From Octopus bimaculoides (lineage: Eukaryota), in assembly GCF_001194135.2 (NCBI RefSeq), contig NC_068990.1, positions 9,047,814-9,109,485 on the forward strand: a DNA stretch of 61,672 nt, given 5' to 3'. Shown here piece by piece: positions 7,807 to 44,117 of this stretch (positions are counted from its first letter, which is position 1; each line of letters begins with the position of its first letter). Position numbers and translations under genes: made by a program. Under the pieces are notes generated by a model. It made no database searches. It saw nothing but the letters and a program-made list of their open reading frames with translations, and was not told the origin of the DNA.

Positions 7807-7950
7807 ATGATCTTGAAAAACCTTGGTGTCATTTTGGCAGTTATAACTGTGTTGATATCTTATTGGTTATATGAGCCATTGCCCGATTCAGTAGCAGAAC
7901 CTTGGAAGTTACGTACAGTAATAGCAGGAAGTAAAGTCCTACATGCTGTT
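7807..7950 (+). CDS. AADAC: AADAC-like coding exon 1 (signal anchor)
   Basis: Encodes MILKNLGVILAVITVLISYWLYEPLPDSVAEPWKLRTVIAGSKVLHAV with a GTAAGT donor at 7951. A pyrimidine tract plus AG at 7773-7774 implies a further upstream 5'UTR exon. Confidence 0.9.
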
Positions 7951-16300: not shown

Positions 16301-17415
16301 TTTGTTTCTGTATTAATATAATAAGTACCAACCAAGTACTATGGTTGATGTAATCAAGTGCATATTCTTTTCTACTCTAGGTAACAAGGCCCAAAATAGA
16401 TCGACCCCAGTGCACAACTGGCACTTAATTTATCGACCTTGAAAGGATGAAAGGCAAAGGCAACCTCAGCAGAATTTGAACTCAGATTGTAAAGACAGAC
16501 GAAATACCGCTAAGCATTTCACCCAGCATGCTAACATTTCTGCCAACTCAAGTACATATTTCTCCAAAAATGTGTGACCTTGTACCCCTGTTAGATATTT
16601 TAATAGCTTATTCCTGCCATCCTCATTTTTCACCATTTTCAAATGACTTATATTCTTTTTCTCTTACCACAGTGTTCTGGATTTGAGATGACTGGATATA
16701 CATCATATTTGAACTGCACAAGACAATTTTCCAATGCGTATATCAGAAATATACAAAGTAACGACAAGATATCAGTAAGAACCTATAAATGAATGTTTCT
16801 TTTGAATTTCAAAATTTTACCTGTCCATTCATTTAACGTCTATTTTTCCATGCAAGTAATTGGTTGGACAGGAACTTGTTCGACAAAGCATTTTATGGCC
16901 TTAACACTTTTGGTACCAACCTGCCTGAAACCGTCTCTAGCTCAGGAGTACATATATCTTATTTTCAAAAGTTCTGAATTAAAATCTTCTACCAAACCTT
17001 AGTCACAATTTATGTTCCTGACACTCACTTAATTATAACTAAGTTATTTTACTAATAAGTACTTGAAAGAAACACAGAGCATCTCAACAGAAATATGGTA
17101 ACAAAAGGGTTAATACCCTCCCTGTAACCAACCCATACCTGTTTTTCCAACATATTAAACAAATAATCAAATAGTTAATTAGATATTTAAGTGATGACTA
17201 ACAATAAGGAAGTGATATTAAACCAGTGTGTGTTGATTATTGTTCCCATAATAATGACCCTCACAAGACAAGATTTTTTTTTTCTATTCAATTCCCTTTT
17301 TGAAAGCACGGAATGACTTCTTGTAATGTGAAAAGAAATGTAAACATCATATCACCATTTTGCTGAGATGGTGATATGCAAGGCTCTGGAATGTGATCTT
17401 ACATACATGTGCCAG

Positions 17416-17447
<32 letters not shown>

Positions 17448-20400
17448 TTTTTTTTTTTCTCTCCTTGTTTCTTTCTGTGGAAGAGTGTAGGCTCAAAACG
17501 TTAAAGACTTTTTCAATTCCTGAGCGTTATACTTATACATCTATTTGTTTTCTACACCACCTGTCTTCGTCTGTTGTTTTTTTGTGAATTCTCCCTATAT
17601 ATATATTTGTATATATATGATTTGAGTTGATTTGATTTGATCTAGTTTCAGCTCATGAGCTGTGGCCATGTAGGGACACTACAATTTGGTGTTGCTACAT
17701 AGTTTTCACTAATTCTTTTTAGAAATTGACATGTGATGCATGAGTGAGTTTGATGCCACTGCCCACATCTGCACCTCCTGCTGTGAAGTTGGTTCATCGG
17801 AGACACTTGACAGTAATAGGTCCAGTTTCATTTTAATGGCACCTAAATCCACCCAATGCAGATCTCTCAAGTCCTTCTGGAGGATATTGAAGAGCTGTAG
17901 TCCCCTGAAGCCCAGACTGTTGCAGTATCTTGTCCTATATCTTGATGGCAAATTTGGAGTCCTTGGCACTATGCAGTGGTGCCCTGTTCTAGTATTTGTG
18001 TAAGTCTTAATGCCAAAGTTTGGGTCAAGACCGCCAGGATTTTCCAGATGTATGTTTATGGCATATCTTTCTCGCCTACACTTTAAGGAATAGAGTCTGA
18101 CATTGCACATCCAGTGGAAAATACCAGCTTCTAGATTTTGCATGTCCTCTAACTATACTGGTAACTGCATAGAAGTTATAGCAATTTTATTCAGAAGTTA
18201 GATCTTCTTGAAGAAACTTGCAATAGTCTTTAGAATGACATTTAAAAAAATCAACTCTAAAGTGATAATGACTAGAATCAAATAACATGTAACTCATATA
18301 CAAATATATGTCAGATATTCATGTTAATGTAATTAAATTAATTGCAGGGAATAATGTTACTGCAGCTATTGGTAGGCAGGCAGATTTAGGATAGAAATTC
18401 ATTTAGCTTTAGTTTAGGATGACATAAGAAAATGAGAGAAAAATATAAATTGTTGCAGCAGTCATTAAGGAATAATTGTTTTAGTTGTTGAGTCCTAATC
18501 AACTCTGCTTGAGCAGATATGTGATATGATTTGAGATAGCTGATATTCCATCAAAAATTTCAATGATCAACATTCTAAATATGACCTCTCCATCGTTATT
18601 ATCAGTTATGCTCTCCTAATATTTAGGATTCCGAGCAGGTGATTTAATAATGTAGTTCCTAATAAATGTCTCTGTGCAACAATGAAGCTCATTGATTATG
18701 CAATTTAGGCTGACACATTGACATTAGCAATCTTTGATCTTTCTAACACACTCAACCAGCTCCAACTAGCTGTAAAAGTATGTTTAGTGAGAAGGTACAG
18801 TATGGTATTGTAAATAGCAATGTAATTTATTGTTTCATGAACTTGCAGTGCTGTGCTCAAATCCTCCCAGTGGTACAATATGTAATAAATGTACTGTATG
18901 TGATGAAGACATGTGCCTGAACCATTTATGGCCATTATAAATCAGTGACTTTTCTGCACAATAATTCAAACTCTCTAGTAAAATATGTTAATGTGTTTTG
19001 TTCAGTGACAGAAAAATAACATTAATTAATTCAGTAACTAATAATATTTTAACCAGTTCAGTAAAGTAGGAGAGACAATTTCGCCTAAAACATTGTATCA
19101 CTTCCATCTATACTCCAAGATGAAAATGCAGCTCAAGGGTCACTGTTTTAACACTGTTGTCGAGATCAAGAGCGAACTGCAGAAAGTCCTCAACTCGCTT
19201 ACAGAAAATGACTTCCAGGCCAGATTCCAAAAGTGACAGGAATGCTGAGACTGGAGTATCGCTGTGCAAGGTGACTATTCTGAAGGAGATGATGTATAAA
19301 TAGATTATTTTTTATTAAATATAACTAGTCCCAGGACTTTTTGATACCACCTCGTACTTTTAGATGTAAACAGAAAAGAAATATCATTTTTAGGGACCCA
19401 AACAATGTCTCATTGTTTTGAAGGTTTTTTTTAAATATCTTTTGTATTGCTTCATAAATTGACAGGTGGTTGATGAAAACTTCAGTGGAGTGAAAGTTAG
19501 AATTTACTATCCAGCTGGAGTGAGTGAGAAAGACAAGACAAAATTATTACCTGGAATTTTGTATTTTCATCCTGGTGGATGGACCTTTGGCAGAATGGGT
19601 AAGTTAGAATGAAAGTTTTAGTTTTTAATTTATGTTTTAAGGAATGTATGAACATCATTTAATGTCTAATTTCCATGCTAGCATGGGTTGGACGATTTGA
19701 CAGGAACTGGTATGGCCAGGGCCACACCAGGCTCCATTATCTGTTCTGGTATGGTTTCTACGACTGGATGCTCTTCTTAATGCCAACCACTTTACAGAGT
19801 GTACTGGGTGCTTTTTATATAGCACCGGTACCAGTGGATGATAAAACATATATTCATGCCTTTTGTAAGAATTAAAGAACCAAATAACTTTACTCTTTCA
19901 CTGCTTTTTTTGGCATTTTGACTGTGGATCCAGTTTAGATGTTAGTTTGTTGGATGTTCATGTCCAGCTTCATGAAAATAAATGCCCTTAACCCTTTCGT
20001 TACTAACCCGGCCGTAGCCGGGCGAANNNNNNNNNNNNNNNNNNNNNNNNNNNNNNNNNNNNNNNNNNNNNNNNNNNNNNNNNNNNNNNNNNNNNNNNNN
20101 NNNNNNNNNNNNNNNNNNNNNNNNNNNNNNNNNNNNNNNNNNNNNNNNNNNNNNNNNNNNNNNNNNNNNNNNNNNNNNNNNNNNNNNNNNNNNNNNNNNN
20201 NNNNNNNNNNNNNNNNNNNNNNNNNNNNNNNNNNNNNNNNNNNNNNNNNNNNNNNNNNNNNNNNNNNNNNNNNNNNNNNNNNNNNNNNNNNNNNNNNNNN
20301 NNNNGAGGAAACAGGGTCTACCCATAGTCTTTCTCAGGAAGCGAAACCTTTAGACTTCTTTTTCATGCTTGTTTGAAATGATTACTGCGGAAACAAATCG

Positions 20401-22937
20401 TTACACAGAATGTAAACAAATCGGAAAAAAAGATAGCTTGCGGTTTCCTGCAACTGTAGATGAAATACGGGCATTTTTTGCCATAAATATTATTATGGGT
20501 ATTAGACAGTTACCCAGAATAACAAATTACTGGAGCGATCAGGAACCTTTTGGCGATGAATATATTTCCAGTATTATGAACGAGTACGATTCGTGAAGCT
20601 GAACCAATATTTACATGTGAGAGACACTAGCAGTACACCCCCACCCAGTACGTGGAGAACTTTGAGACAAAAATCATGCAATAGAATTGATTAAGAACCC
20701 TTTCTTTAATTATGTTCCAAATATCACATTAATATGTTGATAAATAAAAAAGTTACAGGTGTTTAATGAGACTAGTCTAAATTCATGATTATTTTAGAAT
20801 TTAATTGAAACTCATGACGGGTGTATTTTGGTCAGAAATATAGTAACGAAAGGGTTAAGTGGATTTCCATCAAAGTTCAGAGTTAATAGTTATAGCAGCT
20901 GTTTGATGTGATTGTGTGCACTTTTTATTTAAATCATAAGAAGAATGCAATCACTCTTGTTTATCTGTGCATGATTGGACATGCAATTGCAAAAGACTAC
21001 AAGAAATTGATGTAAGCAAACAGGAGCTGTGGCTTTCAAAACCACAAGTGGACTTTGTTTTATTCATTATCAGACAATGCTTGTACTACAATAGGTACTT
21101 GTTTAGTTAATCAGATTGTGTAGTGAGTTGTTATCTGAGGAGCTGGCATACTAATATATTCACCAACTGTAGCACAGATAAAGAAAATGCATTAGGTTAG
21201 AAGAAATTACAGATAAATTGTATTGGACAAGTCATAAAAGTGCAAAAGTAATTTTATGCATGGAGAAAGTGTTTGCATCAGTAGTATATCATGAGAGTGT
21301 GGTGGAGAGTGTGTGTGTGTGTGTGTTAAAGAGAGAGAGAGAAGAAGAGAGTAAAAGAAAGAACAAAGTGATGTGACTTGATGAAACCTTTCAAACTCTA
21401 TCTTCTGTATGACAATTGTTCCCAGCATTACTTAAATAGTTTTGACTTCTGAATTAGATGCCACCTTTACTTAAACTATCCATTTCTCATCCATTTGTCA
21501 CACAAAATGTCTCTCTCTCTCTGCTTCTTGATTATTTTATAAAACATTGATCTAATCATTCTTCTAAAATTAGTAATACCATGCTTTTCATTCCATGGTT
21601 TCTTGACATATGATAAATACATGGTTACAAGCCTGTCTGTAGCCTCGTCTCTCTTTTCAAATCTCAGCTTTTATAATTTATTCAGTAATAAATTCATAAA
21701 TTTTTAGATTTCATTTTTTTTTTCTATATTTTTTATATATAAATTTTACTGTATCCTTTAATAGGTGTTTCTCACAGTTTACTAGAGAGACTGACTCAGG
21801 AGACTGGCGCTGCATTCATTGATGTTGAGTGAGTAATTTCTAAAACATAAAGCCTTATTTTATATCTTTTTGATTAAGTAATTATTTAAATTTGCATTTT
21901 ATTCTATATTAAACTGTTTCTCTCTCTCTCATTCTCTACTATAACTACTCTTTCCAATGGAAATCATCTTTTTTCTTTAGAAAACAGACAGTATAAGACA
22001 TATGTGAACAGTGTGGTTTTATATTTATCTAGTAAAGAATTGCAAATCATCTGCTATGATATCCTCATCATTAAACATCTGTTTTCCATCCTGGCATGGG
22101 TTGGATGGTTTAACAGGAGCAGGTCAGCCAGTGATTCTTTGTTTTGACATGGTTTCTCCAGCTGGATGCACTTCCTAACACCAACCATTTTACAGAGTAT
22201 GCTGGATGTTTTTTACATGCTACCAGCATGGGTGCTTTTATGTGGCACTAGCACAGGTGCAAATGAAGTGTACAATGCACCAGCATGTGTGCATTTTACA
22301 TGTGTGTAATTTGAACGGAAAACATTTGTTTGAGCAGTATAAATTTTAGGAAAGCCTCAGCGTACATACACATAATGTGATGGTGCAATAAAAGCCATTG
22401 ACTGATAAACCCAAGAGTGATAACATCTATTCAGGTACAATGCATAGGTGCAACACACGTTGGGTGAAAGGACGTTGTGAGTTTATTGTAGAAGTTACTT
22501 GTGGTTAAAGTTGTGCTTTGTTTGATCATTTAATGTTTTGTTTTTTCTTTATTTTTTACACTAGCATGGGTTGGGTGAGTAGTTATTTAGGGCAAGATTT
22601 TACTATCAGATCTCGGAGTGGTTGGCGTTAGGAAGGGCATCCAGCTGTAGAAACTCTGCCAAATCAGATTGGAGCCTGGTGTAGCCATCTGGTTTCACCA
22701 GTCCTCAGTCAAATCGTCCAACCCATGCTAGCATGGAAAGCAGACGTTAAATGATGATGATGATGATCCTTTTCTGTCATCAATCTTTTACCTGTTTTTC
22801 AAGTTAAAGATTTTTTTTTAATTAAGAGATCCTTGAAAGCGCTGAGTGATTGGTTATAATGTCAGTATTTTACTCAAGCCAATGACAAGCATGGAATATC
22901 TACATTCATGCACATTTACACACACTCACATACATAT

Positions 22938-22991
<54 letters not shown>

Positions 22992-24942
22992 TTAGGATGG
23001 ACTGCTTTCAGTTTCTATCTGCCATATTTAGTCACAAGGCATAGGAAAAGACACTTGCCAAAGGTGTGCAGTATGTCGGGTAAGTGCCTTCTACATGTGG
23101 GATCGAACCTAAAACCACACGGGTATACTTGTACTTATATGATTATGTCTTAAAAAACAAAACAGACTGGATACTGTCAGTGTGAATATCTTTTATTACA
23201 AGCATTCTTGTGTTCGTTATAGACCTGAGCTAAACAATAACTGATTTGTTTTTGATGAGTGGTCAGCAATGACAATGAGTATCCAACGGTGAAATCATAA
23301 CAAGAAAAAAATAGATTGAAATTTATTTATGAAAGAAAATAAAACCAAAAATATTGTAGAAATTAACTAAAAATAAAGTAAATGTAAACCTTTCTGTTAT
23401 AAATGTTGATTTTAGTTATCAATTTTAATGTAATTTAGTTACCGACTGGCACCAGAACACATTTTCCCAGTTCCTTTCGATGACTGTCTAACAGCAACTG
23501 TACATATCTTGCGGAATGGTAGGGTGTATGGAATTGATAGTTCGCGTATAGCTGTTTCAGGTGAGTAAGCTTTTCTCAGTTGTTGAAAACAAAATCAACT
23601 TTATTTTCATGTTGGAAAACATCAACATTCATGTTATTGTTTTAGTCAGCTGTGAGCATTACAATATTTAATTTCATTACTGTATTCAAAGTTCTGATTT
23701 TTGTTGGAGTTAATGTGACCTAGAATTTCACCCAGAATTATTTCAGTTGTCTTCTCTGGTATGGAAATTGATCTAACACAATTGAGTCCAAATGCGCACG
23801 CTCATACATGTGCACATGTACACATATGTACAAAGAAATTGTCATTATCATGATCAGTCGATGAATTAAGTACCAGTTATGCGCTGGGGTTGATATAATC
23901 GGCTGGTCCCCTTCCCTAAAAATTTCAAGGCTTTGTGCCTAGAGCAGAAATAATTATCATAATAAGTGTATAATACTGTGGTGGAAATGCTAGAGAGATG
24001 GATAAAATACCTTGCAGTATTTCATAATTTTGTGTCACATTTTATGTTGTAATCCTACAAAGACTGCCCACACCTTTTTCTCCACCAGAGTTTATGAAAT
24101 AAGTACCAGTCATACATTGAAGTTGATTCAATCAACTACATTTTTTCTTACAAATGGAAAGTCTTGTGCCTATGATAATAATTATCATTTTATGAATTTT
24201 TTTTCTTGAAAATAATGTCATGCTTTCTTCTATATATCTTATAATCTAACTAACGGCATGATATTAAGTGCATTGTGGCCTTACATGATCAATATTACTG
24301 CATGAAATATAATACATACACTCTAGTGAAAATTAGCTTTTATTTGCAGGAGAATCACTTGGTCATTAGAAATTATGTTGCTAAATGTGACCATCTCACA
24401 TCTGTGCATTACTACCAACACTTCTGTTAGTTACAAGAATTGAATGGACACAGCTACTGCACTGAATACACTTAAACACTGACTTGGTCAAGCATCATCT
24501 TTAATCTGATATACATTATCTATTATTGCTTGTTTATTCATTCAATTAATTATCTTCCTACACGGCAAACAACACTTGTGGCACAATATTGGTGAAGTTG
24601 ATAGGTAAAAAGAAGTAAGATCAAAAATAGTAACTTGGTAATCTTATATGCTGCATGGGTTTTGGTTGTGGGAAAATACTTGAACTTAAAACTACAAGCA
24701 AGCAACCCATTCAATTTTTATGTGAGTTACTTGCTTCTAACAATCATTTCTACTGGTTAGTGGAGGTATGGGTTAGGATTAGGGTTTTGGCTCTGTGGTA
24801 AGTAGCTTGCTTACCAACCACATGGTTTCGGGTTCAGTCCCATTGTGTGGCACCTTGGGCAAGTGTCTTCTGCTGTAGCCTCAGGCCGACCAAAGCCTTG
24901 TGAGTGGATTTGGTAGATGGAAACTGAAAGAAGCCTGTCGTA

Positions 24943-24975
<33 letters not shown>

Positions 24976-27900
24976 GCGTGTGTGTGTGTGTGTGTGTTTG
25001 TCCCCCCCCCCCAACATCGCTTGACAACCGATGGTGGTGTGTTTACGTCCCCGTAACTTAGCAGTTCGGCAAAAGAGACCGATAAAATAAGTATTAGGCT
25101 TACAAAGAATTAGTCTTGAAATATAAAGGGGGTCCGCAAGTCAAAAAGTTTGAAAACCCCTGGTCTAAACAATGAAGATGAGAGGAGTAAATGGTTTAGA
25201 TTAATGAAGCAGTGAAACAGAAAACAAATGCCTTAGAAAGAAATTATGTTTGTACACTCTGTAATGTCTGATAGAAAATTTTAAAGAAGACTTGGCTTTC
25301 ATGACTTGCTTGACAATGCAGGCTAACGAAATGGTTAGAATTAGCATTGAACTCTGTGAGGTACTTGATATATAAGTGTCTTCCAAGGCTCTGATGTTGT
25401 TCTGTTTGTTTTAGTCTTAAAATGACAAGATTTCCACAGAATGTTGGTTTTTACCAACAACTTGGTTCTCATTGCAGAAACTACTGAATGGCTTCTGTCA
25501 ATCAACAATGATCTAAAACTTGTCAAAGTTTTATATACTTTAAATCCAATATACCATCCATTCCAAATAGGAGCTGCAGTTCTTATCAGACAACCATTAC
25601 ATCTATCAACAGAAGATATTTGTCAGATTTCCATTACATGAATACCAAAATACAGATGTTACTTTTTTTCCTTATCTTCTCATAAATTCCAATTTCAATA
25701 TTGTCTTTCTTTCACATACAACTCATCATTTCAAGAGTGCTCTCCTGAAAAACTTATATTCTTAATGTTGTCAGAACTCTAGATCTAAGAGATATTTAAG
25801 TTGTGTACAATTGTTTGCAATATATATTGTCGGAATATATTTGCCTATGTAATTCACTCATTCATTTTACATTGATCTTTTTTTCCATGCTTGCATGTGT
25901 TAAACTGACACATATTATAGAGACATTATTTCTCAGCTTAATGCTCTTTCTGTCATTAACCCTTGCCTGATTTTCGAGTAAGGGTGTTTTCATTCCATTT
26001 GTGTATGAAAAGTATTGAGCTACCAAATGATTTATTGATTGGGAAATGTCAACAGACATCACCATTCACAGCTCAGCAATTTTCATGAAAGGCACAGAAT
26101 ATTATCATTCACGCAAAGACACATGCATATATATATATATATGTATATATATATATGTTTATATATATATGTATATATATATATATATATANNNNNNNNN
26201 NNNNNNNNNNNNNNNNNNNNNNNNNNNNNNNNNNNNNNNNNNNNNNNNNNNNNNNNNNNNNNNNNNNNNNNNNNNNNNNNNNNNNNNNNNNNNNNNNNNN
26301 NNNNNNNNNNNNNNNNNNNNNNNNNNNNNNNNNNNNNNNNNNNNNNNNNNNNNNNNNNNNNNNNNNNNNNNNNNNNNNNNNNNNNNNNNNNNNNNNNNNN
26401 NNNNNNNNNNNNNNNNNNNNNNNNNNNNNNNNNNNNNNNNNNNNNNNNNNNNNNNNNNNNNNNNNNNNNNNNNNNNNNNNNNNNNNGCTTGAAGCAGTCC
26501 TGAATCTCTTGCGAAATGATGCTTTTAACACCTCTGTTGTTTTTTTTTCTTCACTTCTTCCACATCTGCAAAACGTTTTCCTCTAAGGACTCTTTTCATT
26601 TGGGGGAAACAAAAAAATGTTACAGGGTGCATGATCGGATGAATAGGGTGAGTGGGTAAGTGGAGTCGTGCCATTTTTGGTCAGAAACTGTTTCACACTC
26701 AAGGCAGTGTGCACAGGAACATTGTCGTGATGAAACCATCACTCTCCACTTTGCCACAGGTCAGAGTGTTTTCATCTCACCACGTCTTGCAAACGCTTCA
26801 GAACTGCCAAGTAAAATAGCTGGTTAACAGTTTGACCAAGAGGGACAAATTCTATGTAGACAATTCCTTTCACATCGATGAAACAAACCAGTATCGCCTT
26901 GACATGCTTTTTGGGGGCATGGTGACATTGAATGCTTCCTTTGACATCATTCAATGACACCAGTCAGTAGACTTATGCCTGAGGGTCACATCAAGTGGCT
27001 TCTAGTGGCAGAAGCCTGAACTACAATGGGCTTGTCTCACAGAAAACGTTTCCGGTTATTTTGTGGTACCCCCCTCGTATTGATAGATAGTCATGGATCA
27101 ACTTCTACGCAGATTAATCTTTTACTTTATTGAACCTCTAATGATCTCAGTCTGATAATCAGTTCAAAGATAAGCAATATTGATAACAAATCCCAGCATT
27201 ACAGTAACAATCAAGCTTCCTTCCAAAGATGTATATCTTGCTCAAGTAACATAGGTATTGATCATTTTCAATAATGCATTCTGCATATGAGATCATTCCA
27301 CTGAAAAGAAATCGCATCTCAGCAGGCAAAGCTTGTTTACCTAAAATAGCAATACTAGTAGGGGTAAGTCTAAGTCAAACATGAAACACTTAGAATAAAT
27401 TAATAGGAATTAATTCATCTGCAAAGACATTAAGTTTCAAAAGTTAAATGGCAAAAGCAAGAAAAAGGAAAGAAACTGCAGTTAATGTAAGAACAGGCAT
27501 TGCTCAGACAGCAGCAAGTGTCTCCAGATATATCCTCCATATGAAGAATTGTCACAATCAAATTAGTTTAATTTCATCATCATTAGTGTTAGGAAGGGCC
27601 TCCAGCCATAGAAACCAAGCCAAAACAAACTATGGAACCTGGTGTGGCCCCTGGCCTTGCCAATTCCTGTCAAGTCGTCCAACCCATGCCAACATAGAAA
27701 ACAGACATTAAATATCGATGATGCAGAGGATGAGGATCATCATCATCATCATTTTATTGTCCACTTTTCCATGTTCACGTGGGTTGGATGGAATTTGCTG
27801 AAGATACCCTTCCTATCACTAATCCTCACCTCTTTCCAAGCAAGGTAATATTTCCCCCAAGACCAAACATGTTTTCACAGAAAATTGGAGATAATGGACT

Positions 27901-28923
27901 GCTTATATGACATTCATGCAACATCAAGGCAAGGGCACACATACGCACACACACAAAACAGGCTTCTTTCAGTTTCTAACGAATCCCACAAAACTTAGAT
28001 CATCCCAGGGCTATAGTAAAAGACACTTGCCCAAGGTGCCACACAGGGGAGAAAACTTGTCAATCACATTACCATGTCTATACCTTATATATAGTCATTG
28101 AAGTATAACTCTAGAGAATGCACCAAGTCTATTATTATTCTGGGGAGTCTAACTCTGTTTGTGTCCTTGAGCTCAGTGCTGTTAGTTGGTTCAAACTCAT
28201 TTATGATTGTCGTTAAACCAGGTAACAATATTTTTCTCAAGCTGTTTCCTTTTTATGTTTTATTCTTATGCCATTTCAGGTGAAAGTGCTGGAGGGAACT
28301 TAGCTGCTGCTGTTGCACTTCGACTAGCATCCGAAACTACACTTCCTCGTATTAAGAGTCAAATTCTTTTAAGTCCTTTGCTTCAAGCTTTTGATTTGTC
28401 CCTTCCTTCTTATTCTATGCAAAATTTGAGTATTAACTTAATGGACAGAAAATGGATAGCTTCTTATTGGTTGCTTTATGGTGAAGGAAATACTGAAAAC
28501 CTTGATAGTCTTTTAAATGGTAACCACATAAGCCCATCGTTAAAATCTTCAGAGTATGCAAAGTCCGTTTCAATGGACTTACTTCCAGAAGAATTGCGTA
28601 ATCAGCCCCGTGTCAGTGTCAACACAACAAAATATGATGAGAAATTTGCTATTCCATTTGAAAGACTTTTGCTTAACCCTTATTTTTGCCCCTTGTTTGG
28701 AAGAAATCTTAAAAATTCTCCCCCTGTGTATATGATATCATGTACATTTGATGTTGTACGTGATGAAAATTTCTTATATGTACGCAAACTAAAAGATGCT
28801 GGTGTGGAAGTCCAACATGACCATTATGAAGGTGCTGTTCATGGCTTACCAACAATTGAATATTTTGATATAAGTGACACAGTCATAAAGAAGCTTTCAG
28901 AGTATATTCAAAACACTATATAG
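7807..28923 (+). CDS. AADAC: Arylacetamide deacetylase / neutral cholesterol ester hydrolase 1-like gene (HSL-family carboxylesterase), 6 coding exons, 402 aa
   Basis: join(7807..7950,16673..16774,19466..19598,21765..21828,23439..23560,28280..28923) = 1209 nt. All introns are GT-AG with matching phases (0,0,1,2,1). The product has an N-terminal anchor plus YEPLP..EPWK, FHPGGW, DYRLAPEH.FP, GESAGGNLA, FDVVRDE and HG motifs. Exact orthology (AADAC vs NCEH1) is not resolved. Confidence 0.92.
7994..8458. repeat. Long inverted repeat / fold-back (~226-nt arms, 16-nt loop)
   Basis: 7994-8219 is the reverse complement of 8236-8458 at roughly 90% identity by eye. Loop 8220-8235. Confidence 0.92.
11870..12720 (-). 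mobile_element. R4/NeSL-like non-LTR retrotransposon RT fragment
   Basis: Minus-strand IFQGDSL (12521-12542) and FMDDLKL (12429-12449) correspond to RT motifs 4 and 5 of the R4/Dong/NeSL type. Heavily frameshifted. Confidence 0.62.
15908..16062 (+). repeat. Dispersed repeat family 3 ((CAT)n-TTTAACGTCCGCTTTCCATGCTAGCATGGGTTGGACG...GGATGCCCTTCCTAACGCCAACC), representative copy
   Basis: Related copies at ~5770, 8720-8915, 19655, 22070, 22615, 27585 and 35300 in both orientations. Confidence 0.8.
16673..16774 (+). CDS. AADAC: AADAC-like coding exon 2 (not in ORF track)
   Basis: Acceptor ttctttttctcttaccacAG, 34 open codons CSGFEMTGYTSYLNCTRQFSNAYIRNIQSNDKIS, donor GTAAGA. Phase 0/0 fills the expected gap between exons 1 and 3. 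Confidence 0.82.
16905..17109. mobile_element. TTAA-flanked piggyBac-type MITE (second copy at about 40282-40479)
   Basis: TTAA|CACTTTTGGTACCA ... TGGTAACAAAAGGG|TTAA. The subterminal sequence CAACAGAAATATGGTAACAAAAGG recurs at about 40455-40478. Confidence 0.7.
17700..18250 (-). mobile_element. CR1/L2-type LINE 3' fragment
   Basis: ORF 17709-18143: LYSLKCRRERYAI..., RYCNSLGFRGLQLFNILQKDLRDL..., KLDLLLSSVSDEP, typical of the post-RT C-terminus of CR1-group LINEs. Confidence 0.75.
19100..19357 (+). mobile_element. Mariner 3'-end fragment
   Basis: Translates as LTENDFQARFQK*QEC*DWSIAVQGDYSEGD (mariner C-terminus), followed by TIR-like GGACTTTTTGATACCACCTCGTA. Confidence 0.6.
19466..19598 (+). 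CDS. AADAC: AADAC-like coding exon 3 (oxyanion-hole motif)
   Basis: gacAG|VVDENFSGVKVRIYYPAGVSEKDKTKLLPGILYFHPGGWTFGRM(G)|GTAAGT. Confidence 0.92.
19992..20854 (+). mobile_element. Internally deleted piggyBac element
   Basis: TTAA|CCCTTTCGTTACT ... AGTAACGAAAGGG|TTAA. The internal ORF 20369-20596 (ETNRY...DEIRAFFAINIIMGIRQLPRITNYWS) resembles a piggyBac/PGBD transposase. The element spans an N-gap. Confidence 0.88.
21765..21828 (+). CDS. AADAC: AADAC-like coding exon 4
   Basis: atAG|(G)VSHSLLERLTQETGAAFIDV(D)|GTGAGT, phase 1/2. Confidence 0.88.
23439..23560 (+). CDS. AADAC: AADAC-like coding exon 5
   Basis: tttAG|(D)YRLAPEHIFPVPFDDCLTATVHILRNGRVYGIDSSRIAVS(G)|GTGAGT, phase 2/1. Confidence 0.93.
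24788..25117 (+). mobile_element. Abundant SINE family 2 (CCAACCACATGGTTTCGGGTTCAGTCCCA..GTGGCACCTTGGGCAAG), representative copy
   Basis: Related copies or fragments at ~670-1420 (-), 4765, 13790-14160 (-), 16090 (-), 27950 (-) and 37016-37262 (+). Confidence 0.82.
26487..26990 (-). mobile_element. Mariner transposase fragment (catalytic domain), left end in gap
   Basis: Minus-strand translation gives ILVCFIDVKGIVYIEFVPLGQTVNQLFYLAVLKRL, then HHDNVPVHTALSVKQFL and HSPYSSDHAPCNIFLFPQMK. Confidence 0.85.
28280..28923 (+). CDS. AADAC: AADAC-like terminal exon A (complete Ser-Asp-His triad)
   Basis: ccatttcAG|(G)ESAGGNLAAAV...FDVVRDE...AVHGL...NTI*. The Ser codon AGT is at 28285-28287. AATAAA occurs at 29798 and 29819. 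Confidence 0.95.
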
Positions 28924-30110
28924 TGCTTACCTTGTTCCCATTTTGAAATTTACCAAAATATTCCCTCCCACCTCTGCCACTAATTTCTACCAATTTTATG
29001 TGGTTTATTTATTTGGTTTTGCATATTTTCTTTTTGGTTTAATATATAATGAAGATAACTTTATTATTTTTTTGTCTTTACCATTTTATAATCCTTGATG
29101 ACTAGTGTGGTGGTTTATAACAACCTAACAACATTCATTCATAATCCTTAGTCAAATCAAGAACAGTTATGGCATCAAGAAATATTATTTTCAATTCCAT
29201 ACCATTTACCTCTTTTCTATATTTCATCACTACTGTTTCTCTTCTTCTAATCTTCCTAATCCGTTTTACTCAGATCTCTAGAACTCTATTTCTATGCCCA
29301 TGTTTGCCCCAATCCCCAGCAACTCAGATTCTTAGAACACATTTACCAACATTTTGTTTATTGTTCTTGTGTTCTTAGGACTTAAGTTCTCAAGCAAGAA
29401 TCAGTTTGCAGCAGAAGCCTTCTTTTGTTTCTCTTACATCACTAATCTCTTTGTAAAAGGTGAATCATTACAATATTTTCATTTTCTTTTCTTTTTTTTT
29501 TTTTACCGAAAATTCCAAGCTTCTTAGTTAGCACCAAATACAAATAACGCTGCACATATCAAGAAAATAGCTACACACAACTAAATCTTTCTTCCTTGCA
29601 AATAACAAACATAAAACAAACATACTCATTTATAAATGTTGGACTTCACATTCTATAGCAACCTTTTGTGAAAACTAGAAAATATTTCACAAAGGCTGGC
29701 TTTTGCTTTTTCGGAGTTAGAACTAACAACTGCTAGTTACATACAGAGAACAAATACATCATCTACTAAAATACAGTCGACAAACCTTTTACAGTACAAT
29801 AAACATAGGTACATATATAATAAATCTTTGACTGTATTGAATGAAAGAGTTAAAAAAGTAACAATATCTGCCTCATAAACAAAACTTTTCCCTTCAAAAC
29901 ACATCGCTCCTAGTAACCCTCTCCTGCTCAAGTTTTCTCTTTTATGTTTAACCTTCTTGATACCAACCTGTCTGAGACCGCCCTTAGATTTATGATACAA
30001 ATTCTATTTTAAAATGATCTAAATTAAAACCTGCCATCAAAATTTCACATTAGTTTATGTCCTAAATACCAGCTTAATAATGACAAAGTTGTTTCAATAA
30101 GTTTTTCATT

Positions 30111-31055: not shown

Positions 31056-31629
31056 NNNNNNNNNNNNNNNNNNNNNNNNNNNNNNNNNNNNNNNNNNNNN
31101 NNNNNNNNNNNNNNNNNNNNNNNNNNNNNNNNNNNNNNNNNNNNNNNNNNNNNNNNNNNNNNNNNNNNNNNNNNNNNNNNNNNNNNNNNNNNNNNNNNNN
31201 NNNNNNNNNNNNNNNNNNNNNNNNNNNNNNNNNNNNNNNNNNNNNNNNNNNNNNNNNNNNNNNNNNNNNNNNNNNNNNNNNNNNNNNNNNNNNNNNNNNN
31301 NNNNNNNNNNNNNNNNNNNNNNNNNNNNNNNNNNNNNNNNNNNNNNNNNNNNNNNNNNNNNNNNNNNNNNNNNNNNNNNNNNNNNNNNNNNNNNNNNNNN
31401 NNNNNNNNNNNNNNNNNNNNNNNNNNNNNNNNNNNNNNNNNNNNNNNNNNNNNNNNNNNNNNNNNNNNNNNNNNNNNNNNNNNNNNNNNNNNNNNNNNNN
31501 NNNNNNNNNNNNNNNNNNNNNNNNNNNNNNNNNNNNNNNNNNNNNNNNNNNNNNNNNNNNNNNNNNNNNNNNNNNNNNNNNNNNNNNNNNNNNNNNNNNN
31601 NNNNNNNNNNNNNNNNNNNNNNNNNNNNA
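31056..31629. other. Assembly gap (others at 976-1260, 3385-3394, 15583-15907, 20027-20304, 26192-26486)
   Basis: Runs of N. Confidence 0.99.
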
Positions 31630-31956: not shown

Positions 31957-33107
31957 CAAGGGTTGGCTGAAAAGTTCATAGGCTGACTGAGACGCTCTAA
32001 TAAAATGTGACCAAATGAGGTTTAGGTTTATTTTCAACATGTCCCCCTTGCAGTCCACACAATACTTCCATCAGTGTTGCAGTGCTTGGATCTCATTGGT
32101 AAAGAAGCTTTCATCCTGTTAGTTAAAAAGGATAAGGTGTGAGGGTGGAAGAAAGCAAGTTGCAGTCAGAATTACAGGACAAGTGTTTTTTCATGTTGAG
32201 GAACAGATGATAGTCAGATGGGGCCAAATCAGAACAGAGTGGATGATCAACCAGTTGTCAGTTTTCCTAGGTATTTGGTCTTAATAGCCCTTTGTAACTG
32301 CCCTAAGAAGTTGGCATAATGCTCTCCATTGATGGTGTGGCTTTGTGAAAATAGTCAATAAATGGAATGCTTTTTGCATTCAAAACCTGTGGCCATTATT
32401 TTCACTGCAGATGATACAACCATGACCATCTTTGGGGCAGGTGCAGAGGGATGTTTTCACTGCTTGGATTGTCTCTTTGTCTCTGGATCAAAGTGATGTG
32501 GCCAACACTCATTTGGACTTAGGAGATGTTCAAGGAAACCAGCTGGATCTGGCTCAAGCAATATCAGATTTTGGCATGATCTGAGCAGCCTTTTGTGCTT
32601 TTGATCAAGTGTCAGAAGTCATGGCACCCACTGAGCAGAAACCTTCATTATGCCAAGTTCATTGTGCCAATTATTCCCAAGTCTCTCACAGCATATGCTA
32701 ATAGCATTGACTATTTGATTTATTGTCAATGTTTTCCTTAGTGGTGGCAGTTGCAGGTCATCTTCAAGACTCCCCCTTCCCTTCTTAAATTCAGCTACCC
32801 ACTTTTGCACTATTGATAAAACTGGAGCATTATTCCCTAATATAGCAAGCATATCAGCATGAATGCCCTTGGAAGCTAAACTGTTTTTCTGTAGGTACTT
32901 GATAACACTTCGATGCCAAATTTTGTACATTTTCAAGAGAAGTTGCTACTAGTTACTTTTGAAGTCTTTGAACAGTGACATATCAGTTCACTTGGAAAGA
33001 AACAATGCAGTTGTTAACAAGGAGAGTTGAAATTGATGCGTGCAAGATTTCAAAGCTCAAGCATCACTCCTTAATAGTCAGCTTATGAACTTTTCAACTC
33101 ATCCTCA
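31957..33107 (-). mobile_element. Decayed mariner transposon
   Basis: Imperfect TIRs CAAGGGTTGGCTGAAAAGTTCATAGGCTGAC and GTCAGCTTATGAACTTTTCAACTCATCCTCA with TA flanks. ORF 32619-32936 is a mariner N-terminal HTH (HRSVIKYL..., WVAEFKKGRGSLED, VSAQWVP). Confidence 0.85.
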
Positions 33108-42225: not shown

Positions 42226-43431
42226 TCAGGCTGAGTAAAAAGTAAGCAACGTTTTGAAAAAAGGAAATTCATTACAATATATTTCAACAATGCGAAAATT
42301 TTATTCGCCAGAGCAAGTACCATTACAATCAACACATTTTTGCCAACGAGTTACAAGTTTGTTCTAGTAACATAAAAATTTGGAGTTCTGGAGCTGATGA
42401 ACTCTTTGATCGCAATTTCAGCATCGATTTGATTTTTGAACTCCTTCTCTCGCAGGAAATCAAACTGCTTGAAAAAGTGGTAGTCGGTAGGAGAAAGGTC
42501 TGGGGGAGAACTTCGTAGCCAAGTTTCCTCAACTTCTGGAGTGCCATTAGTGAAATGTGTGGTCGAGCATTGTCATGAAGAATGATTGGCCCTCTTCTGT
42601 TGACCATTCTGGGACGGAGGAGTAGCAGTTTTTCTTCATTTTGGCAATTTCATGACAATATGTTTCTGCAGTAATGGTTTTTCCGGGTTTTAAGAAGTTA
42701 TGGTGGATGAGTCCAGCAGTATCCCACCAAAGAGTTACCATAACCTTCTTTTTGAAAAGCTCGGGTTTAGGGAAGGTTTTCGGTGCTTCATTTTGGTCCA
42801 ACCACTGCAAAGAACGTTTTTTTTTTTTTTCCTTTTATTATTATTGTACAGAATCCACTTTTCATCGCAAGTTACAATACGGTCGAGAAATGGATCGGTC
42901 TGGTTACGGAGAAGAAGCTACAGATTTCGTGTCTGCGCATTCAAATCGTATGATACCCATTTGTCGAGCTCTTTTGATTTTCTGATCGCAGGCAGTTTTC
43001 TGGCTAACCTGAAGTTCTTTTGCCAGTTCTCGAGAGGATCTTTCTCAATGACGGTCTTTAATTGACCATCATCGATGACAGATGGGCGTCCACTACGCTC
43101 ACAATCTTCAAGGCTCAGGTTTCCACTGCGAAACCATTTAGACCATTTTTGAACTGACCATTCACTGGTCATTTCTTCACCAAACGTTCTGTTGATATCG
43201 CGAGCAGTTTCAGCTGGGGTTTTTTTTTTAAAGTTGAATAGCAAAATTGCTCGAATATCGCGATTTGGCTGTTCCATTTCAGATGTTTATAACGACGGTG
43301 AAGGGCAAGTCGATATCTGTGTTATCAGACAATTGCAAAAAAAGAATGTTTTTAAAAAATTCAAAATTCTGCAAAATTCCGGTACATATTCTTCATAGTT
43401 CAAAACGTTGCTTACTTTTTACTCAACTTGA
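42226..43431 (-). mobile_element. Full-length decayed mariner (Tc1/mariner) transposon
   Basis: 33-bp TIRs TCAGGCTGAGTAAAAAGTAAGCAACGTTTTGAA and TTCAAAACGTTGCTTACTTTTTACTCAACTTGA (2 mismatches) with TA on both flanks. The transposase is frameshifted across 42918-43277 (HTH, RSGRP), 42547-42810 (KVMVTLWWD..G.IH..FL..G.TI) and 42329-42607 (LHDNARPH). Confidence 0.93.
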
Positions 43432-43470
43432 TATAATGTATTTCATTGTTTTTCTCTTCTTTTTATCCAG

Positions 43471-44117
43471 GTGATGAAGCTGGTGGAAACTTAGCTGCAG
43501 CAGTTTCTCTTAGGCTCGCAGTTGAGACTGCGTTTCCTACTCTAAGAGCTCAAATTCTTATAAGTCCGCCTCTTCAAGCATTTGACTTTCTCACTCCATC
43601 GATGCTGTTTCATGACAAAAGTGTTCCGTTTATAATGAGTCGAAGAATGATCACACAGAATTGGCTCAATTATTACCAAGGTCGCACTAAAAATATTGAT
43701 GAATTTTTGATCAATAACCACACAGCACCTCTTTTGAAAGAATCCGAAGTCTCCCAATTTGTGTCTGTTCGTCAACTACCTGAAAGGTACCAGAAGCAAC
43801 ATACACTTCAAACGTCAACTGACTTTGGTGACGAAAATATTTCTTATGATTTTGAGCCAGTTCTTTTAAACCCATACTTCTGCCCACTGTTGGCACAAGA
43901 TTTCAAAAAGATACCACAAGCATATATTATTTCGGTGGAATTCGATGTTCTAAGAGATGATAGCTTTCTGTTTGTTGAGAGATTGCGTCAATCTGGAGTG
44001 AAAGTATATCACGACCATTTTAACGAAGCCTTTCACGGGATATTAATGTGCGAACATTTTGAAATGAGAGATAAAATCATAGCTTCATTGGTCAGTTTTA
44101 TTAAAGGCAGCATTTAA
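43471..44117 (+). CDS. Duplicate AADAC-like terminal exon B, nucleophile Ser replaced by Glu (alternative last exon or remnant of a paralog)
   Basis: Strong acceptor tttttctcttctttttatccAG in the same phase as exon A. The 647-nt frame is open: (G)DEAGGNLAAAV...LLNPYFCPL...FDVLRDD...FHG...KGSI*. About 98/215 residues are identical to exon A by hand count. Confidence 0.85.

What the first reader, a model, noticed from the sequence alone, without database searches (positions are those of the whole stretch)
43471..43490. Catalytic nucleophile replaced by Glu (GDEAGG) while triad Asp and His are kept
Seen: GT GAT GAA GCT GGT GGA encodes (G)DEAGG, versus (G)ESAGG in exon A and the GDSAGG typical of the family. 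GAA differs from any Ser codon at two or more positions, so a single sequencing error is unlikely. FDVLRDD (acid) and FHG (base) remain. Established: HSL-family hydrolases need this Ser, non-catalytic HSL-fold proteins can act as ligand receptors (plant GID1), and some alpha/beta-hydrolases (epoxide hydrolases, haloalkane dehalogenases) use an Asp nucleophile. Inference: exon B encodes a lipid or small-molecule binder, a dominant-negative partner, or an enzyme with altered chemistry.
Basis: partly seen in the sequence, partly recalled or inferred. Interest (0 to 1): 0.72.

Follow-up and report, generated by a model that had tools for sequence, protein, structure and literature searches.

The report
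Octopus esterase isoform with glutamate nucleophile
One octopus esterase-like gene makes two proteins by choosing between two alternative last exons: one keeps the catalytic serine and the other carries a glutamate there, and that second version has been kept by selection since before octopuses and argonauts split, so it is a real, probably non-esterase, variant and not an error.

Summary
Window 43471-43490 opens a 647-bp terminal exon (B, 43471-44117) that reads (G)DEAGG. Glu191 (GAA, 43476-43478) sits where the family has its nucleophile Ser. Asp347 and His377 are kept.

The window is the Octopus bimaculoides arylacetamide-deacetylase-like gene. Exons 1-5 plus B give RefSeq isoform X1 exactly. 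Exons 1-5 plus A (28280-28923, GESAGG) give isoform X2.

O. sinensis and Argonauta hians have the same A-then-B layout, the same GAA codon and conserved splice acceptors. Exon B is under purifying selection (dN/dS 0.12-0.18, dS about 1 to Argonauta), at least as strong as on exon A. In a neighbour-joining tree, B groups with cephalopod-like sequences that carry Ser, so Ser-to-Glu arose on the octopod branch.

Among about 207 relatives, only the octopods have Glu. Gly, Asp, Asn and Ala occur elsewhere, mostly with Asp and His kept. Abalone and a nemertean independently have the same gene design, with a non-Ser terminal exon.

Best reading: a selected isoform that is not a serine esterase (a pseudoenzyme or binding variant). 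A catalytic carboxylate is not excluded. No biochemical or transcript data were available here.

The parts
7807..7950 (+). Exon 1 coding part (Met1 to about residue 48; N-terminal helix 2-21, the likely membrane anchor). The 3' boundary is approximate to a few bases.
   Evidence: Exact match to P0015 and P0286 residues 1-48. Helix 2-21 in the AlphaFold model.
16673..16774 (+). Exon 2 coding part (about residues 49-82). The 5' boundary is approximate.
   Evidence: Exact match to P0015 and P0286.
19466..19598 (+). Exon 3, shared by both isoforms. It encodes VVDENFSGVKVRIYYPAGV...YFHPGGWTFGRM(G). The oxyanion-loop motif is HPGG instead of HGGG (Pro118 codon 19571-19573).
   Evidence: Pro118 aligns with Gly82 of the EST2 HGGG motif. 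The first Gly is invariant in 75 non-octopod relatives of alignment A1 and in 168 relatives with a recognisable motif.
21765..21828 (+). Exon 4, encoding (G)VSHSLLERLTQETGAAFIDV(D).
23439..23560 (+). Exon 5, encoding (D)YRLAPEHIFPVPFDDCLTATVHILRNGRVYGIDSSRIAVS(G). Its phase-1 donor G|gtgagt is used by both terminal exons.
28280..28923 (+). Terminal exon A (isoform X2). Reads GESAGG with Ser191 (AGT, 28285-28287); acid motif FDVVRDE; His in AVHG; stop TAG at 28921-28923. AATAAA signals at 29798 and 29819.
   Evidence: Orthologues in O. sinensis and Argonauta.
43471..44117 (+). Terminal exon B (isoform X1). Reads GDEAGG and runs to the stop TAA at 44115-44117. ATTAAA signals at 44133 and 44267.
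   Evidence: Orthologues in O. sinensis and Argonauta with a conserved acceptor and phase.
43476..43478 (+). GAA codon for Glu191, at the nucleophile-elbow position that holds Ser in the family.
43944..43946 (+). GAT codon for Asp347, the triad acid in FDVLRDD.
44034..44036 (+). CAC codon for His377, the triad base in AFHG.

Best explanation
Exon B is a genuine alternative 3'-terminal exon of the octopus arylacetamide-deacetylase/NCEH1-like gene, and it has been kept by selection for a long time. Splicing exon 5 to exon A gives a protein with the usual Ser-Asp-His triad. Skipping A and its polyadenylation site and splicing to exon B swaps the whole C-terminal half, from the nucleophile elbow to the C-terminus, for a version with Glu at the nucleophile position. 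All of this is shown. The rest is inferred. Isoform B (RefSeq X1) keeps the same N-terminal anchor, the same fold and an otherwise intact pocket, but it cannot work as a serine esterase. It most likely acts without hydrolysing esters, as a pseudoenzyme isoform. It could bind or sequester the lipid or ester ligands that isoform A hydrolyses, or it could bind a partner protein. This would resemble other alpha/beta-hydrolase-fold proteins that lost the nucleophile (DPP6 with Asp, DPP10 with Gly, ABHD5 with Asn, neuroligins). The Glu carboxylate probably pairs with His377 and/or sits in the oxyanion hole. That would explain why the Glu itself is kept rather than drifting.
For: Gene structure. There is one set of upstream exons and two terminal exons 14.5 kb apart, with no second copy of exons 3 or 5 between them. 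Both RefSeq isoforms are encoded exactly. X1 carries four XP accessions in O. bimaculoides and three in O. sinensis, against one each for X2. Conservation. The A-then-B order, the polypyrimidine/YAG acceptors, phase 1 and the GAA codon are the same in O. bimaculoides, O. sinensis and Argonauta hians. Selection. dN/dS for exon B is 0.175 (bimaculoides-sinensis) and 0.12 (to Argonauta, dS 0.95-1.04). For exon A the values are 0.145-0.166. B evolves more slowly at the protein level (dN 0.115 against 0.197). Fold. The AlphaFold model has pLDDT 95.3 and pTM 0.94, and its best structural matches are HSL-family esterases. Glu191 equals EST2 Ser155. Origin. B groups with cephalopod-like GDSAGG sequences at 90-97% bootstrap. 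S191E is the only one of 18 fixed B-specific differences that falls at a strongly conserved column. Precedent within the family. Independent non-Ser variants (Gly 9, Asp 5, Asn 1, Ala 1) mostly keep Asp and His. Haliotis cracherodii has terminal exons GDSAGG then GDNAGG in one gene, and Tubulanus polymorphus has GDDAGG, GDSAGG and GDSAGG. Asn and Gly cannot be nucleophiles, so a nucleophile-less isoform seems to be what is repeatedly favoured. Precedent outside the family. DPP6 has Asp and DPP10 has Gly in place of Ser, both keep His and Asp, and both are non-catalytic channel modulators (PMC4350108).
Against: No enzyme assay, ligand, partner or transcript/protein evidence was available here. 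Expression of isoform B rests only on RefSeq gene models. Glu, like the Asp seen in five other lineages, is a potential nucleophile or general base. Acidic residues make up 7 of the 18 non-Ser cases. The rest of the catalytic machinery (Gly119, Gly120, Ala192, Asp347, His377) is untouched in B over a divergence of dS about 1. That is also what a working active site would look like. Only three octopod species could be compared.
Confidence: 0.55

Rival explanations
1. Altered chemistry. Glu191 is a catalytic carboxylate. It could be a nucleophile whose ester or anhydride intermediate is hydrolysed by water activated by the His377-Asp347 pair, as in epoxide hydrolases and haloalkane dehalogenases. 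It could also be a general base for direct water attack. Either way isoform B would have a substrate class different from isoform A.
For: The carboxylate sits exactly at the nucleophile elbow. His, Asp, the two oxyanion glycines and Ala192 are all kept. The GAA codon is identical in three species across dS of about 1. Asp at the same position (GDDAGG) arose independently in nemerteans and other lineages. Asp is an accepted nucleophile in this fold (PMC3531081). A Ser-to-Glu change needs at least two base changes, and Asp is one plausible intermediate (inference from the genetic code).
Against: No alpha/beta hydrolase with a Glu nucleophile turned up in the literature searches. Asp and His are kept just as well in relatives with Gly, Asn or Ala, where no nucleophile exists, so their retention is not diagnostic. 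The protein belongs to Abhydrolase_3, not to the epoxide-hydrolase/dehalogenase families. It has HPGGW, not the HGXP motif of epoxide hydrolases (that motif is quoted from my own knowledge). Only one conserved-site change accompanies S191E, whereas engineered esterase-to-epoxide-hydrolase conversions needed more than a nucleophile swap (own knowledge).
Confidence: 0.22
2. Exon B is used from its own promoter. Transcription would start in the transposon-derived sequence just upstream, and the product would be only the C-terminal half of the fold. This matches the old gene model A0A0L8IHX4. On this reading the link to exons 1-5 is an annotation choice.
For: UniProt A0A0L8IHX4 (P0285, 253 aa) starts on the + strand inside the mariner remnant and joins exon B through a donor near 42948. 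The remnant ends about 200 bp upstream of exon B.
Against: The phase-1 acceptor of B matches the phase-1 donor of exon 5 in all three species. Argonauta and O. sinensis gene models also join the upstream exons to B. Half an alpha/beta-hydrolase fold would not be expected to fold on its own, yet the exon is under strong purifying selection over its whole length.
Confidence: 0.05
3. Exon B is a decaying or functionless duplicate (pseudo-exon) that gene predictors include by homology. On this reading the Glu is a neutral lesion.
For: No direct transcript or protein evidence could be retrieved here. The clusters that hold the X1 proteins contain no transcriptome-derived members.
Against: The 215-codon frame is open in three species despite 54% protein divergence from exon A. 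dN/dS is 0.12-0.18 and dN is lower than for exon A. Splice acceptors are conserved. B is closer to outgroup sequences than A is.
Confidence: 0.04
4. Sequencing, assembly or base-calling artefact at the codon.
For: The window comes from a gapped draft assembly with six runs of N.
Against: The same GAA codon is present in three independent assemblies of three species. At least two base changes are needed to reach any Ser codon.
Confidence: 0.01

Closest known systems
Arylacetamide deacetylase (AADAC) / neutral cholesterol ester hydrolase 1 (NCEH1), the animal membrane-anchored branch of the hormone-sensitive-lipase (HSL) family (Pfam Abhydrolase_3)
   Same: The best named relatives are all AADAC or NCEH1-like. 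The Pfam match is Abhydrolase_3. The model has an N-terminal helix followed by an HSL-type alpha/beta fold. The GDxAGG elbow, DVLRDD acid and HG base motifs are in the usual places. Isoform A keeps the full Ser-Asp-His triad.
   Different: Isoform B has Glu instead of the nucleophile Ser. Both isoforms have HPGG (HYGG in Argonauta) instead of the invariant HGGG. The C-terminal half, which carries all three triad residues, comes in two alternative exon versions.
DPP6 (DPPX) and DPP10, non-catalytic alpha/beta-hydrolase-fold proteins of the prolyl-oligopeptidase S9B family
   Same: The nucleophile Ser is replaced (Asp in DPP6, Gly in DPP10) while the triad His and Asp and the elbow conformation are kept. 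Both are single-pass type II membrane proteins that act by binding, as Kv4 channel modulators (PMC4350108).
   Different: They belong to a different family and have a beta-propeller domain. They are separate genes, not isoforms of an active enzyme. The replacing residue is Asp or Gly, not Glu. No partner is known for the octopus protein.
Epoxide hydrolases and haloalkane dehalogenases (alpha/beta hydrolases with an Asp nucleophile)
   Same: A carboxylate sits at the nucleophile elbow and is backed by a His-acid pair (PMC3531081, for the dehalogenases).
   Different: These enzymes use Asp, not Glu. They belong to different Pfam families, have a different oxyanion motif and use cap-domain residues (Tyr or Trp) that polarise the substrate (own knowledge). 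None of these features was shown here.
Plant gibberellin receptor GID1 (an HSL-family member that acts as a ligand receptor)
   Different: GID1 keeps the Ser and Asp and lost the His (own knowledge). The octopus isoform keeps His and Asp and lost the Ser. GID1 is a separate gene, not an alternative isoform.
AADAC-like genes of Haliotis cracherodii (abalone) and Tubulanus polymorphus (nemertean), found here
   Same: Each has one set of upstream exons followed by two or three alternative terminal exons that encode everything from the nucleophile elbow onward. One copy lacks Ser: GDNAGG in Haliotis, GDDAGG in Tubulanus. Asp and His are retained.
   Different: The replacing residues differ (Asn and Asp against Glu). 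The non-Ser exon comes first in Tubulanus and second in Haliotis and the octopods. The tree shows that the Tubulanus copies are a lineage-specific duplication and that octopod B groups with Ser-bearing cephalopod-like sequences. The Ser losses therefore look independent.

Membership tests
HSL family / Pfam Abhydrolase_3 (PF07859) | Significant match to the family profile | tested here: met
   PF07859 E = 4.2e-48, 164 bits against a cut-off of 25.
HSL family / Pfam Abhydrolase_3 (PF07859) | Alpha/beta-hydrolase fold closest to solved HSL-family esterases | tested here: met
   AlphaFold pLDDT 95.3. Top Foldseek matches are HSL-family esterases, E about 1e-23 to 1e-20, TM (target) 0.72-0.86. phmmer against PDB gives EST2 1EVQ at E = 4e-34.
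HSL family / Pfam Abhydrolase_3 (PF07859) | HGGG oxyanion-loop motif | tested here: not met
   HPGG in Octopus and HYGG in Argonauta. The first Gly is 100% conserved in 75 other relatives of alignment A1 and in 168 relatives with a recognisable motif. The two glycines that align with EST2 Gly83 and Gly84 are kept.
HSL family / Pfam Abhydrolase_3 (PF07859) | Nucleophile Ser in GxSxG (GDSAG) | tested here: not met
   Isoform B has GDEAGG; Glu191 aligns with EST2 Ser155. Isoform A meets this feature (GESAGG).
HSL family / Pfam Abhydrolase_3 (PF07859) | Triad Asp (DxLRD motif) and His (HG/HxF motif) | tested here: met
   Asp347 aligns with EST2 Asp252 and His377 with EST2 His282. Both columns are 99-100% conserved.
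HSL family / Pfam Abhydrolase_3 (PF07859) | Carboxylesterase/lipase activity | not testable with these tools
   Needs recombinant protein and assays.
Animal AADAC/NCEH1 subfamily | Closest named relatives are AADAC/NCEH1, and the protein has an N-terminal hydrophobic anchor of about 20 residues | tested here: met
   Named hits. Helix 2-21 (MILKNLGVILAVITVLISYWL). Membrane topology itself was not tested.
Non-catalytic alpha/beta-hydrolase-fold proteins (pseudoenzymes such as DPP6, DPP10, ABHD5, neuroligins) | Nucleophile replaced while the fold is retained and under purifying selection | tested here: met
Non-catalytic alpha/beta-hydrolase-fold proteins (pseudoenzymes such as DPP6, DPP10, ABHD5, neuroligins) | Demonstrated lack of catalysis and a defined binding partner or ligand | not testable with these tools
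   No assay or interaction data were available.
Carboxylate-nucleophile alpha/beta hydrolases (epoxide hydrolase / haloalkane dehalogenase type) | Asp at the nucleophile elbow | tested here: inconclusive
   A carboxylate is present, but it is Glu, one methylene longer than Asp.
Carboxylate-nucleophile alpha/beta hydrolases (epoxide hydrolase / haloalkane dehalogenase type) | Membership of those sequence families | tested here: not met
   Only Abhydrolase_3 and BD-FAE match. All of the top 50 Foldseek matches and the 60 listed PDB sequence matches are esterases or lipases.
Carboxylate-nucleophile alpha/beta hydrolases (epoxide hydrolase / haloalkane dehalogenase type) | Substrate-polarising cap residues (two Tyr, or Trp/Asn for halide) | not tested
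   Would need model coordinates or a solved structure.
GID1-type HSL-fold receptors | Ser and Asp kept, His lost; N-terminal lid closing over the ligand | tested here: not met
   The pattern here is the opposite: His377 kept, Ser lost. The GID1 pattern is quoted from my own knowledge.
Alternative 3'-terminal exons of one gene | A single set of upstream exons; both terminal exons have acceptors in the same phase as the shared donor; the arrangement is conserved in other species | tested here: met
Alternative 3'-terminal exons of one gene | Transcripts showing both the exon 5-A and the exon 5-B junctions | not testable with these tools
   Only RefSeq predicted isoforms X1 and X2 in two Octopus species and an Argonauta model are available. 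No transcriptome-derived members were found in the clusters.

The most novel reading that the evidence does not exclude
Glu191 is a working catalytic carboxylate in an HSL-family active site. It could be a nucleophile that forms an ester or anhydride intermediate resolved by His377/Asp347-activated water, or a general base. By choosing a terminal exon, the octopus gene would then switch between a serine esterase and an enzyme with a different chemistry. The Asp variants (GDDAGG) in nemerteans would be parallel inventions of the same thing. This would be the first natural alpha/beta hydrolase known to me with a Glu nucleophile.
Probability: 0.2. Interest if true: 0.85.

Novelty: new variant of a known kind. 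Interest (0 to 1): 0.55.

Why it matters
Alpha/beta-hydrolase proteins that have lost their nucleophile are well known, but they are usually separate genes. Here a single gene offers both states. One terminal exon gives a Ser-Asp-His esterase and the other gives a Glu-Asp-His protein with the same anchor and fold. Both have been kept by selection since before Octopus and Argonauta diverged.

The same design, with different replacing residues, appears independently in an abalone and a nemertean. That suggests a recurring advantage in co-producing a nucleophile-less partner of this lipid/xenobiotic esterase. It also provides natural matched pairs for testing what such pseudoenzymes do.

If the Glu turns out to be catalytic, it would add a new nucleophile to one of the best-studied enzyme folds. 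For genome annotation there is a practical point: both isoforms are named 'arylacetamide deacetylase', and that name is probably wrong for one of them.

Tried and rejected
1. Second gene copy. I looked for a second set of upstream exons between A and B with tblastn, using exons 3 and 5 and foreign full-length proteins. None was found in the window, in O. sinensis or in Argonauta. The A-B interval has no N in the latter two assemblies. The window has one gap in that interval (31056-31628).

2. Neutral pseudo-exon. Rejected by dN/dS and the intact frames.

3. Private allele or sequencing error. Rejected by the three genomes.

4. RNA editing restoring Ser. A-to-I editing of GAA can give only GGA, GAG or GGG (Gly or Glu), never a Ser codon (genetic-code reasoning). 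Rejected as a rescue route.

5. An ancient shared non-Ser exon across molluscs and nemerteans. The neighbour-joining tree places octopod B with Ser-bearing cephalopod-like sequences and makes the three Tubulanus exons monophyletic, so the losses look independent. Deep nodes are poorly supported and only neighbour joining was available.

6. Literature. Searches for octopus or cephalopod AADAC, for a GXEXG motif and for a catalytic serine replaced by glutamate in esterases found nothing relevant.

7. First protein search. The search with exon B alone missed the RefSeq isoform because of the word index. The isoform was recovered through the upstream exons and the exhaustive search.

8. Other loci. 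Pomacea and Patella could not be fetched.

9. Active-site geometry. Model coordinates are not returned by the tools, so Glu-His and Glu-oxyanion distances could not be measured.

10. Identity of P0001 and P0017-P0019. These Ser-bearing sequences, the closest relatives of exon B, could not be named. They are called cephalopod-like only by similarity, including the shared N-terminal (W)LYEPL motif (WLHEPI in P0019).
Full report
**Observation**

An intron with a long polypyrimidine tract ends in ...ttttatccag at 43470. The exon opens GT GAT GAA GCT GGT GGA. With the single G left over from the previous exon this reads G-D-E-A-G-G. The open frame runs 215 codons to TAA at 44115-44117.

A second copy of the same kind of exon starts at 28280, after ...gccatttcag, with GT GAA AGT GCT GGA GGG, which reads G-E-S-A-G-G. 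It ends at TAG 28921-28923. The two copies are 46% identical as protein. FDVLRDD and AFHG are present in exon B. FDVVRDE and AVHG are present in exon A.

**What the locus is**

tblastn with foreign full-length relatives, followed by exact mapping, shows one gene on the + strand:

- exon 1, 7807-7950
- exon 2, 16673-16774
- exon 3, 19466-19598
- exon 4, 21765-21828
- exon 5, 23439-23560
- terminal exon A or terminal exon B

Exons 1-5 plus B reproduce, residue for residue, RefSeq 'arylacetamide deacetylase isoform X1' of Octopus bimaculoides (P0015; XP_014769880.1 and three further accessions). Exons 1-5 plus A reproduce isoform X2 (P0286; XP_014770186.1). So the window is O. bimaculoides, and the Glu isoform is already an annotated model. 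I found no paper that discusses it.

There is no second copy of exon 3 or exon 5 between A and B. The exon 5 donor (G|gtgagt, phase 1) fits both acceptors. Polyadenylation-type hexamers follow each terminal exon.

**Conservation and selection**

O. sinensis (L004) and the argonaut Argonauta hians (L002) have the same order: upstream exons, then A, then B. The A-B spacing is 19.0 kb in O. sinensis and 5.4 kb in Argonauta, with no assembly gaps in that interval. All three species have GAA at the nucleophile codon of B and a Ser codon in A (AGT, AGT, AGC). The acceptor sites are conserved.

| Comparison | Exon | dN/dS | dS | dN |
|---|---|---|---|---|
| O. bimaculoides vs O. sinensis | B | 0.175 | 0.161 | 0.028 |
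| O. bimaculoides vs O. sinensis | A | 0.145 | 0.195 | 0.028 |
| O. bimaculoides vs Argonauta | B | 0.121 | 0.95 | 0.115 |
| O. bimaculoides vs Argonauta | A | 0.160 | 1.24 | 0.197 |

These are Nei-Gojobori estimates. Against O. sinensis, the Argonauta comparison gives dS 1.04 for B and dN/dS 0.166 for A. Exon B is therefore under purifying selection at least as strong as exon A, and it changes more slowly at the protein level.

**Where the Glu came from**

In neighbour-joining trees of the terminal-exon proteins, the three B exons group with four unnamed cephalopod-like sequences, at 90.5% and 97% bootstrap. Those four are P0001 from an ENA contig and P0017-P0019 from Logan transcript-length contigs. 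All four carry GDSAGG, and of the three full-length sequences P0017 and P0018 carry HGGG while P0019 has HGVG; P0001 has no N-terminal part. The A exons fall outside this group.

The contig that carries P0001 has exon 5, one terminal exon 1.4 kb later and nothing similar in the next 10 kb. So B is the counterpart of the ordinary Ser-bearing terminal exon. The Ser-to-Glu change happened on the octopod branch before Octopus and Argonauta split. Whether A is an octopod-specific, fast-evolving duplicate or an older copy lost elsewhere is not resolved, because only neighbour joining was available and A sits on a long branch.

Only 18 positions are fixed in B and differ from residues fixed in the four Ser-bearing relatives. 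S191E is the only one at a strongly conserved column.

**Structure**

With a 78-sequence alignment, AlphaFold gives a very confident model of isoform X1 (mean pLDDT 95.3, pTM 0.94). It has an N-terminal helix (2-21) and an alpha/beta core. Glu191 lies between strand 180-190 and helix 192-206, the nucleophile elbow. The nearest solved structures are all HSL-family esterases or lipases.

In the phmmer alignment to EST2 of Alicyclobacillus (1EVQ), the correspondences are:

- Glu191 aligns with Ser155
- Asp347 aligns with Asp252
- His377 aligns with His282
- His117-Pro118-Gly119-Gly120 aligns with His81-Gly82-Gly83-Gly84

Pfam places the protein in Abhydrolase_3.

**How unusual it is**

An exhaustive HMMER search of 1.84 billion cluster representatives with exon B found 2859 relatives. 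I combined the best 150 of these with the hits of the other searches. In the set whose alignment covers the site, the nucleophile column holds Ser 189, Gly 9, Asp 5, Glu 2, Asn 1 and Ala 1. The two Glu cases are the Octopus and Argonauta proteins. Glu is thus unique to octopods in this sample, but loss of Ser is not rare in this family.

Nearly all the non-Ser relatives keep the triad Asp (16 of 16) and His (15 of 16), including those with Gly, Asn or Ala. This matters for interpretation. Keeping Asp and His does not by itself indicate chemistry. The ESTHER database paper says the same of alpha/beta hydrolases in general, and it lists Ser, Cys and Asp as the accepted nucleophiles (PMC3531081).

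**A recurring gene design**

Some non-Ser relatives are annotated as 'isoform X2', so I fetched two loci.

- In the abalone Haliotis cracherodii (L005), one set of upstream exons is followed by a GDSAGG terminal exon (19836-20495) and a GDNAGG terminal exon (24419-25051). Two annotated products share the start.
- In the nemertean Tubulanus polymorphus (L006), exon 5 is followed by three terminal-exon copies: GDDAGG (14916-15557), GDSAGG (18033-18689) and GDSAGG (19384-20019).

The three Tubulanus copies are each other's closest relatives (100% bootstrap), and octopod B groups with Ser-bearing cephalopod-like sequences. The Ser losses therefore look independent. In at least three lophotrochozoan lineages an AADAC-like gene offers a choice of C-terminal halves, one of which lacks the serine.

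**A second departure, in both isoforms**

The shared exon 3 encodes HPGGW in Octopus and HYGGW in Argonauta. The first glycine of HGGG is invariant in 75 non-octopod relatives of the alignment and in 168 relatives with a recognisable motif. The two glycines that align with the EST2 oxyanion glycines are kept (that Gly83 and Gly84 form the EST2 oxyanion hole is my own knowledge). Whether isoform A is a fully competent esterase with this loop is therefore an open question too.

**Interpretation**

Shown:

- Exon B is a conserved, selected alternative terminal exon.
- It gives an intact HSL-type fold.
- Glu sits exactly at the nucleophile position.
- The rest of the catalytic signature in that exon is unchanged.

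Inferred: what the isoform does. I think the most likely reading (about 0.55) is a non-esterase isoform that works by binding. Four observations point that way. Every characterised member of the family needs the Ser. No Glu-nucleophile alpha/beta hydrolase turned up in the literature searches. Lineages with the same gene design use Asn or Gly, which cannot be nucleophiles. There are also good precedents outside the family for nucleophile-less members that keep His and Asp and act through binding. DPP6 (Asp) and DPP10 (Gly) are both type II membrane proteins (PMC4350108), and ABHD5 and the neuroligins are further cases from my own knowledge.

Both isoforms share the N-terminal anchor, so they would sit in the same membrane. 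Isoform B could hold the substrate, or a partner, without turning it over. A carboxylate that bridges His377 and the oxyanion amides would explain why the Glu itself is conserved. That step is inference, because I could not inspect coordinates.

The main rival (about 0.2) is that the carboxylate is catalytic, in the manner of the Asp of epoxide hydrolases and haloalkane dehalogenases. The unchanged His, Asp and oxyanion glycines, the invariant GAA and the independent Asp variants are all compatible with this. Against it, the protein shows no other feature of those enzyme families.

Minor rivals are weak or refuted. These are a separate promoter in the upstream transposon remnant (old model A0A0L8IHX4), a decaying pseudo-exon, and a sequence error.

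**Limits**

- Expression of either isoform rests on predicted RefSeq models. No transcript-derived sequences of isoform B were present in the protein clusters.
- Only three octopod species were available.
- The phylogeny is neighbour joining on about 213 columns.
- The identity of the Ser-bearing sister sequences is inferred from similarity alone.
- No biochemical data exist.

**Verdict**

The feature is a functional, conserved isoform, already present in RefSeq as a predicted model but, as far as I could find, not described. It is a new variant of a known kind: an alpha/beta-hydrolase protein without its serine. Two points are uncommon. The replacing residue is Glu, and the active and serine-less versions are alternative terminal exons of one gene, a design that recurs in other lophotrochozoans. 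I rate it moderately interesting (0.55). It would rate much higher if the Glu proved to be catalytic.

Noticed in passing
window 19466-19598 (Pro118 codon 19571-19573): The shared exon 3 encodes HPGGW instead of HGGGW. Argonauta has HYGGW. The first Gly is invariant in 75 non-octopod relatives of alignment A1 and in 168 relatives with a recognisable motif. The change affects both the Ser isoform and the Glu isoform, so it is uncertain whether isoform A is a standard esterase.
   Followed up: partly
L005 19836-20495 and 24419-25051 (Haliotis cracherodii); L006 14916-15557, 18033-18689 and 19384-20019 (Tubulanus polymorphus): AADAC-like genes of an abalone and a nemertean also have one set of upstream exons and two or three alternative terminal exons. 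One copy has lost the Ser: GDNAGG in Haliotis, GDDAGG in Tubulanus. The tree suggests these losses are independent. L006 also has an annotated 410-aa product ending at 25833 whose last exon I did not locate.
   Followed up: partly
window 42329-43277, minus strand: A degenerate Mos1/mariner transposase remnant (HTH_48 and a partial DDE Transposase_1, broken into three ORFs) ends about 200 bp upstream of the exon B acceptor. A weaker HTH_48-like remnant lies at 32619-32936 (minus strand), also in the A-B interval.
   Followed up: partly
window about 42700-42948, + strand, joined to 43471: The older UniProt model A0A0L8IHX4 (253 aa) starts inside the transposon remnant on the + strand and splices from a donor near 42948 into exon B. 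This is either an annotation artefact or a possible alternative promoter. No transcript data were available to decide.
   Followed up: no
window about 29378-29464 (within the likely 3' UTR of exon A): The O. vulgaris model CAI9729225.1 (689 aa) chains most of exon A, a small exon that matches this stretch, and exon B into one protein with two C-terminal halves. In O. bimaculoides the small exon is not in one frame with that model, so this is probably a prediction artefact.
   Followed up: partly
window 976-1260, 3385-3394, 15583-15907, 20027-20304, 26192-26486, 31056-31628: There are six runs of N (assembly gaps). One of them lies between exons A and B. The gap-free O. sinensis and Argonauta intervals show no extra homologous exon there.
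   Followed up: yes
window 21765-21828 (exon 4): Octopods have IDVD where the family has (V)SVD. The Ser at this column is 93% conserved in other relatives and is Asp in all three octopod sequences compared. The significance is unknown.
   Followed up: no
L002 28928-32842 (Argonauta hians): The next gene downstream of the Argonauta AADAC-like gene is a splicing factor 3A subunit 3 (SF3A3) homologue. I did not check whether the window's 3' part (after 44117) holds the same neighbour.
   Followed up: no
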